Source: Macrostomum hystrix (lineage: Eukaryota > Animalia > Platyhelminthes). Taken from it: DNA of 64,000 nucleotides. The position numbers and the translations under genes were made by a program. Location of the stretch: the NCBI GenBank assembly GCA_950097015.1, contig CATNEN010000025.1, positions 5,828,001 through 5,892,000 on the forward strand. Direction: 5' to 3'. This document shows positions 54,376 through 61,479 of this stretch, piece after piece. The notes below the pieces were generated by a model, which did not search any database, had not been told where the DNA came from, and was given only the letters and a program-made list of their open reading frames with translations. The first letter of the stretch is position 1. Every line of letters starts with the position of its first letter.

Positions 54376-54511
54376 ATTGACAACTCTATTATTATTATTT
54401 TCTAATTACAATACATACTCCTGCTTATAAGCATGTTAGTTCTTTAAAGAATATAAAAAACAAGCTTACCTAACCATTCTAGTGGGTTTTTTGAATCAAG
54501 CTGATGCTATA

Positions 54512-54829
54512 ATGGAGAAGCAGCTTAAATCGCAACTAGAAACTGTCATGAACACAGAGGGTGTTGTTGCTGTATTGGCAGTAGATTCGCGTGGCTTACC
54601 ATTGGCTAGCAAGGGTGCCGTCTCTGGTGACATCTCTGGTGCTGTCAAAAGCTTAGCAGACCACGCCGCTGCTCTCGCTAGAGAAGCCTCCAGTGGTGGA
54701 GGCAATGGAGCTGGTCCCCGAGTGACGGCTGTGTCAGTGAACACTGACAGTCTAAGTTTGCTGGTGTCGCAAGCCTCGGCTGATGCCGGCAACGGTGTCA
54801 CAACGGCAGTGTTCAAGTTGAACTCGTGA
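54512..54829 (+). CDS. LAMTOR5: Ragulator complex protein LAMTOR5 (HBXIP), 105 aa, intronless CDS
   Basis: MEKQLKSQLETVMNTEGVVAVLAVDSRGLPLASKG...SGAVKSLADHAAAL...TTAVFKLNS matches the LAMTOR5 pattern ([29 protein letters not shown]...TVAVHKMAS). Confidence 0.85.
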   Translation: MEKQLKSQLETVMNTEGVVAVLAVDSRGLPLASKGAVSGDISGAVKSLADHAAALAREASSGGGNGAGPRVTAVSVNTDSLSLLVSQASADAGNGVTTAVFKLNS

Positions 54830-57006: not shown

Positions 57007-57570
57007 ATGACCGACACCAGAGACGTTATTCGCATCACGGACGACACCGACGACGACTTCGATCAGGCCGTTGGAGGCGCCGGCGATGAAAGCATTCGCC
57101 TAGCCAAAGAGGGCGCTAAGCGGCGCAAAGGTCGCGGCTTCGAATCCGAGCAGGACAGAGACGACACAATGGAATTCGACGCTGTCGGCGTCGACGACGG
57201 CGATCTAGCCGGTCCGCAGCGCTCAGTTGAAGGCTGGATTCTGTTTGTGCGCAATCTGCACGAGGAGACCACTGAGGACGACCTTACTGACAAGTTCAGC
57301 GAGCACGGTGAAGTCAAGAGCTTGCACCTGAACCTAAATAGGCGCACAGGCTACATCAAAGGCTATGCTCTGGTTGAGTTTCAGCATTTTAAAGAGGCCT
57401 CAGCTGCCCAGGCCGCCCTTAATGGCTCCGATTTGAATGGCCAACGGATGCACGTCGACTGGGCCTTTACCCGCGGTCCCTCTGTTGCCGGCGGCGCATC
57501 CGGGCGCAAGTCACGGCGTCAGCGAGACGGCGGCAAGCAGCAGCGAGCTGAGCGCAGTCGCAGTCGATAA
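57007..57570 (+). CDS. RBM8A: RNA-binding protein 8A (Y14/Tsunagi), exon-junction-complex core, 187 aa, intronless CDS
   Basis: KRRKGRGF; [57 protein letters not shown]; VDWAF; RS-rich tail. Confidence 0.95.
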
Positions 57571-57745: not shown

Positions 57746-58575
57746 CTGGTATAGTGACTGCAATTCCATGGTATCTGACACCTGGTATAGTGACTGCAAT
57801 TCCATGGTATCTGACACCTGGTATAGTGACTGCAATTCCATGGTATCTGACACCTAGCATAGTGACTGCAACTCCATGGTATCTGACACCTGGTATAGTG
57901 ACTGCAATTCCATGGTGTCTGACACCTGGTATAGTGACTGCAACTCCATGGTATCTGACACCTAGCATAGTGACTGCAACTCCATGGTATCTGACACCTG
58001 GTATAGTGACTGCAATTCCATGGTATCTGACACCTGGTATAGTGACTGCAATTCCATGGTATCTGACACCTGGTATAGTGACTGCAACTCCATGGTGTCT
58101 GACACCTGGTATAGTGACTGCAACTCCATGGTATCTGACACCTGGTATAGTGACTGCAATTCCATGGTATCTGACACCTGGTATAGTGACTGCAACTCCA
58201 TGGTATCTGACACCTGGTATAGTGACTGCAATTCCATGGTGTCTGACACCTGGTATAGTGACTGCAACTCCATGGTATCTGACACCTGGTATAGTGACTG
58301 CAATTCCATGGTGTCTGACACCTGGTATAGTGACTGCAATTCCATGGTGTCTGACACCTGGTATAGTGACTGCAACTCCATGGTATCTGACACCTGGTAT
58401 AGTGACTGCAATTCCATGGTATCTGACACCTGGTATAGTGACTGCAACTCCATGGTATCTGACACCTGGTATTGTGACTGCAATTCCATGGTATCTGACA
58501 CCTAGCATAGTGACTGCAACTCCATGGTGTCTGACACCTGGTATAGTGACTGCAATTCCATGGTGTCTGACACCT
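57746..58575. repeat. Minisatellite, 36-bp unit (cctggtatagtgactgcaattccatggtatctgaca), about 23 copies
   Basis: Direct tandem repetition. The unit length is a multiple of 3, which explains the 314- and 279-aa repeat ORFs. Confidence 0.96.
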
Positions 58576-59084
58576 TGAATAGTGCCTCCGATTCCTAGGG
58601 ATTATGTTAGATACAGAAGCACCGTCAATGCTACTACATGCGTTTAAATGTGCATTTTTACCATCTGTCCCTTTGAATCTAGTGTATGTGCCGTGTTGTT
58701 GACGTACGAGCGTAGTTAATTTCTCCCGGTCTTGTCACCTACCGTTTCTCTACCCCTTTTGTTTGTTATGTCACGCTAACTAGCTTGTGTATGATCAGCG
58801 TTTCTCACTCGTATTTTTTATCGTTCAAAGCCGTTTAAATACTAATAATTCTCTATTTCCCAGTAACATATGTGCTGAGTCACTAAATATAATTGAAATC
58901 GGCATTTTTTCAATTATAACTTTATAAGTCTGCTTGAAATGGTCCGTTCATTATGTTTTATCTTTTACTCATTAGTTGGTTTTCTTTTTTTGGTTTTGGC
59001 GGGTACAAATCCGTTTATTAAAACGGATTTGTCCTTGAAATGATAGTAAAAATCGGTGTTCTGACTGGAGGGTATGTCTGCTGA

Positions 59085-59550
59085 CACCTAGCTGTTATGA
59101 CTGCTGACACTAGGCTGTTAAGACTGCGGACTCAGTGGTAATATGACTGTAGACACTAGGCTGTTATGACTGCGGACTCAGTGGTAATATGACTGCAGAC
59201 ACTAGGCTGTTATGACTGCGGACACTAGGCTGTTATGACACTAGGCTGTTAAGACTGCGGACTCAGTGGTAATATGACTGTAGACACTAGGCTGTTATGA
59301 CTGCGGACTCAGTGGTAATATGACTGCAGACACTAGGCTGTTATGACTGCGGACACTAGGCTGTTATGACACTAGGCTGTTAAGACTGCGGACTCAGTGG
59401 TAATATGACTGTAGACACTAGGCTGTTATAACTGCGGACTCAGTGGTAATATGACTGCAGACACTAGGCTGTTATGACTGCAGACACTAGGCTGTTAGGA
59501 CTGCAGACACTAGGCTGTTATGACTGCGGACTCAGTGGTAATATGACTGC
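59085..59550. repeat. 23-bp two-variant minisatellite with a 131-bp higher-order period
   Basis: Units gactgcggacactaggctgttat and gactgcggactcagtggtaatat. The higher-order repeat starts at 59121, 59252 and 59383. Confidence 0.93.
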
Positions 59551-59670
59551 TGAATATATTGTATTATAACTGCTTACGCCAACCGAGGTGTATGCCACAG
59601 GCACATTTTAATGATGTGACATTGCTTGACCAGTGCACATCCTGATAATCGACATCTCCGTACCTTTCAG

Positions 59671-60546
59671 TCCACCCTATTTCCGTCATCCACCGCCCGC
59701 TTGCGGCTGGCGCAGCAGCTGCTGCTTCAGCTGCGCCAAGCCTCACCGTCAGTCGCTTGCCAGCGCTTCTGTAGCAGCCGATCTCCAAAAGACGATGACA
59801 ACAGCCAGACCGCTGAGCAGCAGTTCACGCACGACTACTGGATGCGCCGTTGGCAGTCGCTGGCTCCCGAGTCCGATGTTCCGGCAGCAGCCGCTGCAGC
59901 CGGCTGGCCGCGCTGGCACCGGCCCCAGGTGCATCCGTTTCTGATTCGCTACTGGCCCACGCTGCAAGCCGGTTTGAACCAGAACCAGCAGCAGCAGCAG
60001 CAGCAGGTCCTGGTGCCTCTGTGCGGCGCCAGCTTAGACCTGGCATGGCTAGCCGAACAGTCGGGCGTTGCCGGCGTTACGGGCGTCGACCTCGGCGGCG
60101 AGCCGGTGTTTCGTCGCCTAGGCCTCCAGCCTGCGCTCGACCGCTCCGACCTGTGCCCGGGCCTGCATTGCGTCCGCTCCGGCCGGCTGCGCCTGTACGG
60201 CGGCGACCTGTTTCACCCGGCCCTGAGTCGACTGGAGGCCGGCCGCTCCAACCTGGTGTGGGATCGCGGCTCCCTGGTGGTCATCAACGCTGCCGATCGT
60301 CGCGACTATGTGGCACTGCTGCACTCGCTGTGCGGCCCGGGTCACCGGACCCTGCTAGAGACCACCGTGTTCCCCAGGGCGCTGCACCCGGGACCGCCGT
60401 TCTGCATCGATCACGACCAGGTGATGTCGCTCTATAGCGAGCTGTACCACGTGCACCTGCTGGAGGTGTTCAGAGATGACGAGCGTAGACTGCTGTACAA
60501 CCTGCCTGAACTGTTCTATCATTATTATCTGCTAACTGCAAAATAA
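59671..60546 (+). CDS. TPMT: Thiopurine S-methyltransferase-like SAM-dependent methyltransferase with an N-terminal extension; no genomic ATG for the N-terminus
   Basis: HDYWMRRW, WHRPQVHPFL, VLVPLCGASLDLAWLA, VTGVDL, YGGDLF, VWDRGSLVVI...RRDYVALL and GPPFCI all match TPMT motifs. A phase-0 acceptor (cctttcag) lies at 59663-59670. Confidence 0.85.
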   Translation, partial: STLFPSSTARLRLAQQLLLQLRQASPSVACQRFCSSRSPKDDDNSQTAEQQFTHDYWMRRWQSLAPESDVPAAAAAAGWPRWHRPQVHPFLIRYWPTLQAGLNQNQQQQQQQVLVPLCGASLDLAWLAEQSGVAGVTGVDLGGEPVFRRLGLQPALDRSDLCPGLHCVRSGRLRLYGGDLFHPALSRLEAGRSNLVWDRGSLVVINAADRRDYVALLHSLCGPGHRTLLETTVFPRALHPGPPFCIDHDQVMSLYSELYHVHLLEVFRDDERRLLYNLPELFYHYYLLTAK

Positions 60547-60619
60547 TTCATTTCTGTTGCTACGCACTTTACGGACTACGGCTGTCCCTAGTTTTCTCTG
60601 ATCTTCTGATTAACACACA

Positions 60620-60874
60620 AGGGTAGCCAGTGGCACAGCCGCAGCTATTGCACAGCGCCTGTGTACAGCTCTTCAGTCCATGGACTGGTGTGGCCGCCAC
60701 CCCATCTAAATATCTACCCCAGCTGATGCTGGTACCAATTTCACTTCTAGCTAAACTGAAGCACTATGGGAGTGTATTGTCTTCCTCATTCACAAAAAGG
60801 GCTTCCCTTGGGTTGAGATTCGAACTCCCGATCTTTTAGCCAGAAGTCCGAATCTCGAAACCACTCGGCTACAA
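60620..60874 (-). mobile_element. SINE family B-related copy
   Basis: Minus-strand tRNA head (tagccgagtggtt...gggagttcgaatc), then ggtaccagcatcagctgg, ccagtccatggactgaa and caatagctgcggctgtg, all shared with 48958-49283. Confidence 0.75.
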
Positions 60875-60924
60875 TATCCCAGTCTCTTACCGTGACGGTC
60901 TCTTACTGCAAAGACTCCTGTGAA

Positions 60925-61160
60925 GTTCCCCTGACACCCCGCTGACACTCCATTGTTCGCCTGACACCCCGCTGACACTCCATTGTTCCCCTGACACCCT
61001 TCTGACACTCCATTGCTCCCCTGACACCCTTCTGACACTCCATTGTTCCCCTGACACCTTCTGACACTTTTTGTTCCCCTGACACCCTTCTGACACTATT
61101 TTGTTCCCCTGACACCCTTCTGACACTCCATTGCTCCCCTGACACCCCGCTGACACTCCA
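60925..61160. repeat. Minisatellite, 30-bp unit (ccctgacacccttctgacactccattgttc), about 8 copies
   Basis: Direct tandem repetition. Confidence 0.92.
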
Positions 61161-61479
61161 CTGTGTTTTGCCAGGTCATACAGATCATCTCCAATCGTAT
61201 TTGCATCTGTTCCGGTGCTGGCTTAATTTCGATATTGATTTTTTACAGTTTTTTTCCTACCCGATGAGAGTAAGTCCGGCTGATCATTTTTTTCACATAT
61301 AACTTATTTTTTTTCTCCATCATATATGTCTAGCTGTTGTATAAAGTTATCCAGACATTTATTACAAACTAGTTCTTGAAGTCGACTCTAGTGATTATAT
61401 TTTTTATTGGCACAATCGCAACTGTTTATGATTTTACGCTATTATTCATATCATGCTTGTTTGCTTTACCAGAACATCA

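What the first reader, a model, noticed from the sequence alone, without database searches (positions are those of the whole stretch)
59600..60546. TPMT-like gene with no genomic start: the spliced-leader AUG would supply Met1 and create a mitochondrial-type presequence
Seen: the frame is closed upstream (ATG ATG TGA at 59611-59619). The first in-frame ATG (59842) lies inside the conserved YWxxRW motif. A pyrimidine-rich acceptor cctttcAG (59670) is exactly phase 0. Known: flatworm spliced leaders end in AUG, which can act as the initiator. Inference: SL+exon gives MSTLFPSSTARLRLAQQLLLQLRQASPSVACQRFC|SSRSPK, which has 5 Arg and no acidic residue in 41 aa plus an RFC|SS-type cleavage site. That is a presequence-like leader on a normally cytosolic methyltransferase family. 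Protein targeting would then depend on trans-splicing.
Basis: partly seen in the sequence, partly recalled or inferred. Interest (0 to 1): 0.72.

Follow-up and report, generated by a model that had tools for sequence, protein, structure and literature searches.

The report
Start-less flatworm TPMT gene, spliced-leader start
In this Macrostomum flatworm a thiopurine-methyltransferase-family gene has no usable start codon of its own, and RNA assemblies break from the genome exactly at the predicted splice acceptor, so it most likely starts at the AUG that ends the trans-spliced leader (a known flatworm habit); that its N-terminus sends the enzyme to mitochondria is plausible but untested.

Summary
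The gene is a single-exon TPMT-family gene (PF05724). An in-frame TGA lies at 59617-19. A TTTCAG acceptor ends at 59670 in phase 0. The only early genomic in-frame ATG (59842) sits between two nearly invariant Trp residues.

RNA-type contigs from three runs of two studies all leave the genome exactly at 59670/59671. Two carry 23 further non-genomic letters, and none covers the unique 59551-59640. I could not see the leader letters themselves. Their length (24 with the shared G) is what a k=31 assembly should keep of a leader shared by thousands of mRNAs. The published M. hystrix leader ends in ATG.

Both M. lignano orthologues are annotated 5'-partial from the homologous position and contain no methionine at all.

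The first 41 residues (50 in M. lignano) are Arg-rich and acid-free and lie outside the TPMT fold. However, amphipathicity is not significant, the proposed RFC|SS cleavage site fits no strict motif and is not conserved, and no targeting predictor could be run.

Verdict: the spliced-leader start is well supported (about 0.8) and mitochondrial targeting is open (about 0.45). The scan has already reported the same device for other genes of this genome (TOP3A, cardiolipin synthase, D2HGDH). This is a new member of a known kind.

The parts
57007..57570 (+). Upstream neighbour on the same strand: an intronless RRM gene (RBM8A/Y14-like by eye). It is context for a possible polycistron.
   Evidence: ORF. 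Pfam RRM_1 9.2e-19. 82% identical to M. lignano L002 2076-2528, which also lies upstream of the TPMT gene there.
59073..59550 (.). Tandem array (23/46/131-bp units) immediately upstream, within the presumed outron or intergenic region.
   Evidence: Tandem Repeats Finder.
59617..59619 (+). In-frame TGA that closes the reading frame upstream. It is preceded by ATG ATG at 59611-59616.
59665..59670 (+). Trans-splice acceptor TTTCAG. It fits the [T/C]TNCAG motif enriched at M. lignano SL acceptor sites.
   Evidence: Sequence. Motif from PMC8629364. Contigs of X5, X6 and X2 stop matching the genome here (table 8).
59671..60546 (+). Single coding exon: 291 codons plus TAA. With the leader AUG it gives a 292-aa protein. 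There is no intron.
   Evidence: ORF. Contigs X5 record 6 and X6 record 14 are collinear from 59670 to 60746/60749 with 0 gaps.
59671..59790 (+). Presequence-like N-terminal region (residues 2-41 of the SL-AUG form): 5 Arg, no acidic residue, and a low-confidence predicted helix at exon residues 7-23.
   Evidence: composition; AlphaFold2: H7-23, pLDDT 40-55; residues 24-47 disordered; dN/dS 0.45, GC3 0.74.
59795..59797 (+). The only other ATG before 59842. It is out of frame, has A at -3, and opens a reading frame that ends at 59944. It would intercept ribosomes that skip the leader AUG.
   Evidence: Read (ORF 59633-59944 frame).
59839..59853 (+). W-x3-W motif (WMRRW) of the TPMT N-terminus, containing the first genomic in-frame ATG at 59842-44.
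   Evidence: W57 and W61 nearly invariant. M. lignano has Leu at the Met position.
59911..60474 (+). TPMT domain (Pfam PF05724 envelope), with VLVPLCG, GVD, WDRGSL and GPPF motifs.
   Evidence: Invariant columns. Alignment to human TPMT 2bzg, E=1.7e-23.
60547..60749 (+). 3' UTR, at least to here. RNA contigs end at 60746/60749 inside a dispersed expressed repeat (60631-60741).
   Evidence: tables 2 and 8.

Best explanation
The locus is an intronless TPMT-family S-adenosylmethionine methyltransferase gene of a Macrostomum flatworm; earlier scan notes name M. hystrix. Its pre-mRNA is trans-spliced at the TTTCAG acceptor ending at 59670. The spliced leader, which ends in AUG, is joined directly to 59671 in phase 0. 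The leader's AUG is therefore the first AUG of the mRNA and the only one that can give a full-length enzyme (292 aa). Shown: the anatomy, the family, and the exact RNA/genome break at the acceptor. Also shown: the species' leader ends in ATG, and the M. lignano orthologues have no Met codon. Inferred: that the 23 non-genomic letters are the leader, and that ribosomes start at its AUG. The first ~41 residues form an Arg-rich, acid-free extension outside the methyltransferase fold. This extension most likely acts as an organelle (mitochondrial) targeting peptide. That last step is inference only; I put it at about 0.45.
For: (1): contigs X5 record 6 (1100 nt) and X6 record 14 (1103 nt) match 59670-60746/60749 without gaps, and each has 23 more letters before 59670 that do not match the genome. 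X2 record 5, from another study, matches from 59670 and has 3 unmatched letters before it. Depth is zero in 59551-59640 in all four runs, so these are spliced RNA, not DNA. I settled the orientation of minus-strand records from table 7: the loose-end median of 158 is (255+61)/2. (2) The match starts at G 59670, as expected if the leader's final G coincides with the G of the acceptor AG. (3) 23+1 leader letters plus 7 exon letters make 31, the word length I recall for Logan contigs. With about 7,254 trans-spliced genes (PMC10468722), a shared leader should stop being unique after 6-7 exon letters. A private cis exon gives no reason for both assemblies to stop there. (4) The M. hystrix leader ends ...TTATTGC-ATG. 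The acceptor fits the [T/C]TNCAG trans-splice motif. (5): both M. lignano orthologues are annotated 5'-partial from the homologous base and contain 0 Met. Copy g2 has no ATG anywhere in its open frame. (6): the N-terminal 52 codons have dN/dS 0.45 and GC3 0.74 (domain 0.17 and 0.77), whereas the upstream DNA has GC 0.42; the frame is kept across a 7-8 codon length difference between the species. (7) Starting at ATG 59842 would delete the nearly invariant W57. An out-of-frame ATG at 59795 with A at -3 lies before it. (8) The SL AUG is an established initiator in flatworms (Cheng et al. 2006, as cited in PMC9851317; PMC10468722 supplement). (9) Presequence-like composition is conserved in both species despite only 50% identity. 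Named animal TPMTs have short N-termini of 6-16 aa with their own Met.
Against: The leader letters themselves were not displayed; one search hid 68 loose-end rows. The SL identity is therefore indirect. The runs are not on record as RNA. In M. lignano the two bases before the homologous junction are TG, not AG, which I cannot explain. The leader AUG has a weak context (U at -3). For targeting: the hydrophobic moment of the N-terminus is no higher than in shuffles (p about 0.2). The AlphaFold helix 7-23 has low confidence. No predictor or localisation data exist.
Confidence: 0.75

Rival explanations
1. The spliced-leader start is real, but the N-terminal extension is not a mitochondrial presequence. 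It could be a disordered tail, a signal for another compartment, or a regulatory segment, and the enzyme stays cytosolic.
For: Amphipathicity is not significant and there is no strict or conserved MPP cleavage motif. The region is low-confidence or disordered in the model. It evolves faster than the domain (dN/dS 0.45). Mammalian TPMT is treated as spatially separate from mitochondrial sulfide oxidation (PMC13089183).
Against: Both species keep 41-50 residues with 5-6 Arg and no acidic residue, followed by an acidic patch. Both keep a phi-x-x-phi-phi segment (AQQLL / LQWLL). The same genome uses SL-AUG starts on presequences of accepted mitochondrial proteins, according to earlier scan notes that I did not check.
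Confidence: 0.4
2. A cis-spliced upstream exon, not the spliced leader, is joined at 59671. It supplies the ATG, or it is only 5' UTR.
For: The 23 non-genomic letters were not read. A 23-nt terminal first exon would also give equal lengths in two runs.
Against: A length of 24 with the shared G is what a shared leader gives at k=31. The acceptor fits the trans-splice motif. About 20% of the genes of this species are trans-spliced. The M. lignano models are cut at the homologous base, as SL trimming would do.
Confidence: 0.08
3. Translation starts at the genomic ATG 59842, and the open frame upstream of it is untranslated leader.
For: It is the only early in-frame genomic ATG. The SL AUG has a weak context. 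An open frame of 57 GC-rich codons is not rare by chance (about 0.19 by my estimate).
Against: This start would remove the nearly invariant W57. M. lignano has Leu at this position and no Met anywhere. The upstream segment shows purifying selection and coding-type GC3. An out-of-frame ATG in good context lies at 59795, before it.
Confidence: 0.07
4. The gene is a recent bacterial transfer or a contaminant, since it is GC-rich and intronless, and it is not a working animal gene.
For: GC is 0.65-0.70 against 0.42 for the window. There is no intron. The tree does not place it inside the animal TPMT clade.
Against: It is expressed and spliced. It is flanked by flatworm repeats and a syntenic RRM gene in two species. 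The orthologues show dS about 0.84 and dN/dS 0.17. The best solved relative is human TPMT, with a shared ...YLLT-x-K end. Other exons of the window reach GC 0.57-0.61. The backbone of the tree is unresolved and the branch is long.
Confidence: 0.05

Closest known systems
Flatworm mRNAs that use the spliced leader's 3'-terminal AUG as initiator methionine (Cheng, Cohen, Ndegwa & Davis 2006, J Biol Chem 281:733, as cited in PMC9851317)
   Same: The leader ends in AUG and is joined in frame to an exon that lacks its own start. The leader AUG is required to make the full-length protein.
   Different: Here the case concerns a free-living macrostomid and a TPMT-family gene. Translation from the leader AUG is not shown for this gene.
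Other start-less, presequence-bearing genes of this same genome reported by this scan (TOP3A s1-316732, cardiolipin synthase s1-363654, D2HGDH s1-300447; unchecked AI notes)
   Same: The device and the kind of RNA evidence are the same: a short foreign leader joined at the first exon.
   Different: Those are accepted mitochondrial proteins. TPMT is treated as a cytosolic enzyme in mammals.
Human/mouse thiopurine S-methyltransferase (PDB 2bzg, 2gb4)
   Same: It is the same family by sequence, E=1.7e-23. The PLCG, WDRG and PGPPF motifs are conserved, as is the C-terminal YLLT-x-K.
   Different: The Macrostomum protein has a basic, acid-free N-terminal extension and a poly-Gln/Ala insertion, and it sits on a long branch. 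Named animal orthologues in my sample have 6-16 residues before the W-x3-W motif and their own Met.
Alternative trans-splicing that adds or removes a mitochondrial presequence in trypanosomes (from my own knowledge; Nilsson et al. 2010 is cited in PMC9851317 for altered signal peptides)
   Same: The place where the leader is joined decides whether a targeting peptide is translated.
   Different: In trypanosomes the AUG is genomic and the choice is between acceptor sites. Here the AUG itself comes from the leader, and only one acceptor was seen.

Membership tests
TPMT family (Pfam PF05724) | Profile match above the curated cut-off | tested here: met
   110.2 bits against a cut-off of 26, E=1.5e-31.
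TPMT family (Pfam PF05724) | Conserved SAM-binding and active-site motifs (W-x3-W, VLVPLCG, acidic residue after strand 2, WDRG, GPPF) | tested here: met
   Invariant or nearly invariant columns in A1 and A3. GVE is GVD here. Residue-by-residue alignment to human TPMT.
TPMT family (Pfam PF05724) | Methyltransferase fold | tested here: inconclusive
   The AlphaFold2 model shows alternating strands and helices from residue ~48 onward, but mean pLDDT is 66.7 and the alignment is shallow. I did not run a fold search.
Bacterial Se/Te thiopurine methyltransferase equivalog (TIGR03840 / NF009732) | Score above the equivalog cut-off | tested here: not met
   106 bits against 223, and 100 against 213. 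It is a family relative, not that equivalog.
SL-AUG-initiated flatworm mRNA | The species' spliced leader ends in AUG | tested here: met
   M. hystrix leader 43 nt...TTATTGC ATG (PMC10468722 Suppl. Table S3).
SL-AUG-initiated flatworm mRNA | The leader is joined to the exon at the proposed acceptor in RNA | tested here: inconclusive
   Three contigs break from the genome exactly at 59670/59671, with 23, 23 and 3 non-genomic letters. The letters were not shown, so identity with the leader is inferred from length.
SL-AUG-initiated flatworm mRNA | The leader AUG is in frame, with no stop before the ORF | tested here: met
   The exon starts in phase 0 at 59671.
SL-AUG-initiated flatworm mRNA | No genomic AUG can give the full-length protein | tested here: met
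   A stop lies at 59617. The first in-frame ATG is inside the W-x3-W motif. The M. lignano orthologues have 0 Met.
SL-AUG-initiated flatworm mRNA | Translation actually begins at the leader AUG | not testable with these tools
   This needs ribosome profiling or N-terminal proteomics.
Mitochondrial matrix-targeting presequence | N-terminal 20-60 residues rich in Arg, Ser, Ala and Leu and free of acidic residues | tested here: met
   5 Arg with 0 Asp/Glu to residue 41. M. lignano: 6 Arg with 0 Asp/Glu to residue 50.
Mitochondrial matrix-targeting presequence | Amphipathic helix | tested here: inconclusive
   Maximum muH is 0.48, and 20% of shuffles reach it. AlphaFold helix 7-23 has pLDDT about 40-55.
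Mitochondrial matrix-targeting presequence | MPP cleavage motif (R-2, R-3 or R-10) | tested here: not met
There is no strict R-x-[FYL]-[SA] or R-10 match. A strict motif is not obligatory, so this only weakens the case.
Mitochondrial matrix-targeting presequence | Predictor score or experimental localisation | not testable with these tools
   No TargetP, MitoFates or DeepLoc here, and no localisation data.

The most novel reading that the evidence does not exclude
Macrostomum has moved a TPMT-type thiol/sulfide/selenide methyltransferase into mitochondria. The targeting peptide exists only on trans-spliced mRNA, because its Met1 is the leader's AUG; in M. lignano the gene has lost every Met codon. 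That would place methylation-based sulfide detoxification beside the mitochondrial oxidation pathway in a sediment-dwelling worm.
Probability: 0.4. Interest if true: 0.5.

Novelty: new member of a known kind. Interest (0 to 1): 0.35.

Why it matters
For annotation: genes like this one are called 5'-partial or are started at a wrong internal ATG, as both M. lignano models show. Gene finders for flatworms need to add the leader AUG. For biology: if the extension is a true presequence, it would be the only animal TPMT with an organellar address among those I could find. Recent work (PMC13089183) proposes TPMT as a methylating route for HS- that is spatially separate from mitochondrial oxidation. 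A mitochondrial TPMT in a sulfide-exposed meiofaunal worm would be a natural test of that idea. The general mechanism is already known, and this scan has seen it repeatedly in this genome.

Tried and rejected

(2) I looked for the species' own protein in the protein collection so as to fetch the RNA contig. It is not there; only M. lignano orthologues were found. I did not look up M+exon, because that sequence is not encoded in the window as such.

(3) ARAGORN and Rfam on the window found no tRNA and no RNA family, including around 60560-60960 at E<=1. My tRNA-like impression of about 60790-60875 is therefore unconfirmed.

(4) A first tblastx synteny check missed the upstream RRM gene. tblastn with the ORF found it in L002.

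(5) Cheng et al. 2006 is not held, so I cite it through PMC9851317.

(6) The Schistosoma phytochelatin synthase paper looked like a precedent for trans-splicing-dependent targeting. It states the opposite: it found no evidence of trans-splicing and attributes the isoforms to cis alternative splicing.

(7) A family tree to decide between vertical descent and transfer was unresolved: long branch, open backbone.

(8) Strict MPP motifs and the hydrophobic moment gave no positive support.

(9) I did not run the large representative search. The family was already clear, and no claim here rests on absence of relatives.

Full report
**What is there**

- The ORF frame is closed by TGA at 59617-19, preceded by ATG ATG.
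- The 17 codons between that stop and 59671 hold no ATG.
- A pyrimidine-rich acceptor, TTTCAG, ends at 59670, so an exon starting at 59671 is in phase 0.
- The first in-frame genomic ATG is 59842.

The ORF (59626-60546 as listed) is a TPMT-family methyltransferase.
- Pfam PF05724 scores E=1.5e-31, 110 bits against a cut-off of 26.
- It does not reach the cut-offs of the bacterial Se/Te equivalogs.
- The best solved relative is human TPMT (2bzg, E=1.7e-23). PLCG, WDRG and PGPPF are conserved, and the C-terminus ends ...YLLTAK against human ...YLLTEK.
- In a 13-sequence alignment the two Trp of the N-terminal W-x3-W motif are at least 90% conserved, and the Met of ATG 59842 lies between them.

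**Which organism, and which leader**

Earlier notes of this scan call the genome Macrostomum, and one names M. hystrix. I did not verify the species name independently. The closest proteins are two M. lignano proteins at about 70% identity. The window also holds an exact 24-nt copy of the 5' half of the Macrostomum leader.

The published M. hystrix leader is 43 nt and ends ...TTATTGC-ATG (PMC10468722, Suppl. Table S3). The same paper reports 7,254 trans-spliced genes (20%) at its 10x threshold. Its supplement states that all known flatworm leaders end in AUG and that this AUG is sometimes used as the initiation site. In M. lignano the top motif at trans-splice acceptors is [T/C]TNCAG (PMC8629364). 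TTTCAG at 59665-70 fits it.

**RNA evidence (contigs only)**

No listed holder is on record as RNA. Even so, X5 and X6 total only 46-50 million letters of contigs, and in all four runs the depth is zero over the unique stretch 59551-59640.

| Record | Length | Match to the window | Letters before 59670 that do not match |
|---|---|---|---|
| X5 record 6 | 1100 nt | 59670-60746, 2 differences, no gap | 23 |
| X6 record 14 | 1103 nt | 59670-60749, no gap | 23 |
| X2 record 5 (another study) | 247 nt | 59670-59913, no difference | 3 |

For minus-strand records I had to decide which end carries the unmatched letters.
- Table 7 gives a median loose length of 158 behind 60741 for X5.
- That equals (255+61)/2 for records 11 and 12 only if record coordinates are in the record's own orientation.

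Three assemblies from two studies therefore leave the genome at exactly the predicted junction, and the gene has no intron.

The match begins at the G of the acceptor AG. That is expected if the joined sequence ends in G, as the leader does.

The row with the loose letters at 59670 was among the 68 not shown, so I did not read the leader.

Its length is nevertheless informative. This step is inference, and the contig word length of 31 is from my own knowledge.
- 24 leader letters plus 7 exon letters make 31.
- With about 7,000 trans-spliced genes, about 1.8 other genes should share the first six exon letters and about 0.4 the first seven.
- A contig running into a shared leader should therefore end exactly about there, in every run.
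- A private upstream exon gives no such expectation.

**Comparative evidence**

The two M. lignano copies (PAA92640.1 and PAA82684.1; loci L001 and L002) are both annotated 5'-partial. Their CDS starts at the base homologous to 59671. Neither protein contains a single methionine. In copy g2 the whole open frame, from the upstream stop to the stop codon, holds no ATG. At the position of M. hystrix ATG 59842, M. lignano has Leu.

| Measure (M. hystrix against M. lignano g1) | 52 aligned N-terminal codons | TPMT domain |
|---|---|---|
| Amino-acid identity | 50% | 76% |
| dN/dS | 0.45 | 0.17 |
| GC3 (M. hystrix sequence) | 0.74 | 0.77 |

The reading frame is kept across a 7-8 codon length difference between the species. 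GC falls to 0.42 immediately upstream of the acceptor. The N-terminal segment is therefore coding sequence.

In the mature mRNA the only ATG between the leader and 59842 is an out-of-frame one at 59795 with A at -3. It would intercept ribosomes that skip the leader AUG.

**Is it a mitochondrial presequence?**

For:
- With the leader Met, the first 40 residues hold 5 Arg, no Asp/Glu (the first is at residue 42), 10 Ser/Thr and 11 Ala/Leu.
- M. lignano keeps the same character: 6 Arg and the first acidic residue at 51.
- Both species keep a phi-x-x-phi-phi segment, AQQLL / LQWLL.
- AlphaFold2 puts a helix at exon residues 7-23 and disorder to about residue 47, with the TPMT fold beginning after that. 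Confidence is low there.
- Named animal TPMTs in my sample (Nucella, Petrolisthes, Chamberlinius, Ylistrum, Mizuhopecten, Ptychodera) have 6-16 residues before W-x3-W and their own Met. Saccoglossus has a long extension, but of mixed charge.

Against:
- The hydrophobic moment is reached by about 20% of shuffles.
- No strict R-3 or R-10 motif is present.
- I could not run a targeting predictor.

Some unnamed TPMT-family proteins from environmental data (P0037, P0060, the P0006 cluster) also carry targeting-like N-termini. Such extensions are therefore not unique in the family.

I rate mitochondrial targeting at about 0.45.

**Surroundings**

- The upstream neighbour on the same strand is an intronless RRM gene at 57007-57570, RBM8A/Y14-like by eye (Pfam RRM_1).
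- Its orthologue also precedes the TPMT gene in M. lignano.
- A LAMTOR5-like ORF lies further upstream, also on the + strand.
- The 2.1 kb between the RRM gene and TPMT is mostly tandem arrays.
- A conserved same-strand pair with a trans-spliced downstream gene suggests a polycistronic precursor. Nothing here tests that.

**Origin**

The gene is GC-rich (0.65-0.70; window 0.42) and intronless, and it sits on a long branch. The tree leaves it in an unresolved polytomy with an animal clade, a bacterial-type clade and two unnamed sequences. Other exons of the window reach GC 0.57-0.61, and the gene predates the split of the two species (dS about 0.84). I see no case for recent transfer. The deeper origin is open.

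**Comparison with what is known**

The leader AUG as initiator is established in flatworms. According to Cheng et al. [quoted passage not shown] This scan has already reported the same device on other genes of this genome. TOP3A, cardiolipin synthase and D2HGDH have follow-up reports; MRM2, a TFAM-like gene and CDK5RAP1 have first-reader notes only. Those are AI notes that I did not check.

The new elements here are the gene family, which is treated as cytosolic in mammals (PMC13089183), and the complete loss of Met codons in the M. lignano copies.

**Unexplained**

In both M. lignano loci the two bases before the homologous junction are TG, not AG. Copy g1 has a genomic ATG exactly where the leader AUG would sit, and copy g2 has CTG. 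Nearby AGs would put the leader AUG out of frame. This could be a non-canonical acceptor, an expressed copy elsewhere, or an artefact of leader trimming.

**Verdict**

The spliced-leader start is well supported (about 0.8) but not read letter by letter. Mitochondrial targeting is plausible and untested. This is a new member of a known kind, of modest interest.

Noticed in passing
window 60894-60917 (+): An exact 24-nt copy of the 5' half of the Macrostomum spliced leader (GACGGTCTCTTACTGCAAAGACTC), preceded by CCGT. It lacks the leader's 3' half and ATG. A 30-bp tandem array follows at 60925-61164. Earlier scan notes describe leader relics in retrotransposon LTRs of this genome. I did not test whether this one lies in an LTR.
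   Followed up: partly
L001 and L002, 5990-6006: The M. lignano TPMT copies have TG, not AG, before the base homologous to the M. hystrix trans-splice junction. Copy g1 has a genomic in-frame ATG there, and copy g2 has CTG and no ATG in the whole frame. This may be a non-canonical acceptor or an annotation artefact.
   Followed up: partly
window 54482-54829, 57007-57570, 59671-60546 (all +): Three small intronless genes lie on one strand: LAMTOR5-like, an RRM gene (RBM8A/Y14-like by eye), and TPMT. The RRM-then-TPMT order is kept in M. lignano. A possible polycistron; untested.
   Followed up: partly
window 60631-60741: A dispersed repeat in the 3' UTR. It is present in dozens of other RNA contigs, with many variants, at 50-100 times the summed depth of the TPMT contig. 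The TPMT contigs end inside it.
   Followed up: no
window about 60790-60875 (-): By eye this stretch looks tRNA-derived, with D-loop-like GCCGAGTGG and T-loop-like GTTCGAATC. ARAGORN and Rfam (E<=1) find nothing. It may be a decayed tRNA-derived SINE, or nothing.
   Followed up: partly
window 57746-58595 and 59073-59550: Two long tandem arrays (36-bp units, 23.6 copies; 131-bp units, 3.3 copies) fill most of the space between the RRM gene and the TPMT acceptor. The M. lignano intergenic region also holds tandem repeats, of unrelated sequence.
   Followed up: no
proteins P0037, P0060, P0006 cluster (environmental): Unnamed TPMT-family proteins with long, basic, acid-poor N-terminal extensions that look like organellar targeting peptides. 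P0006 ends ...YLLTAKG, like the Macrostomum protein.
   Followed up: no
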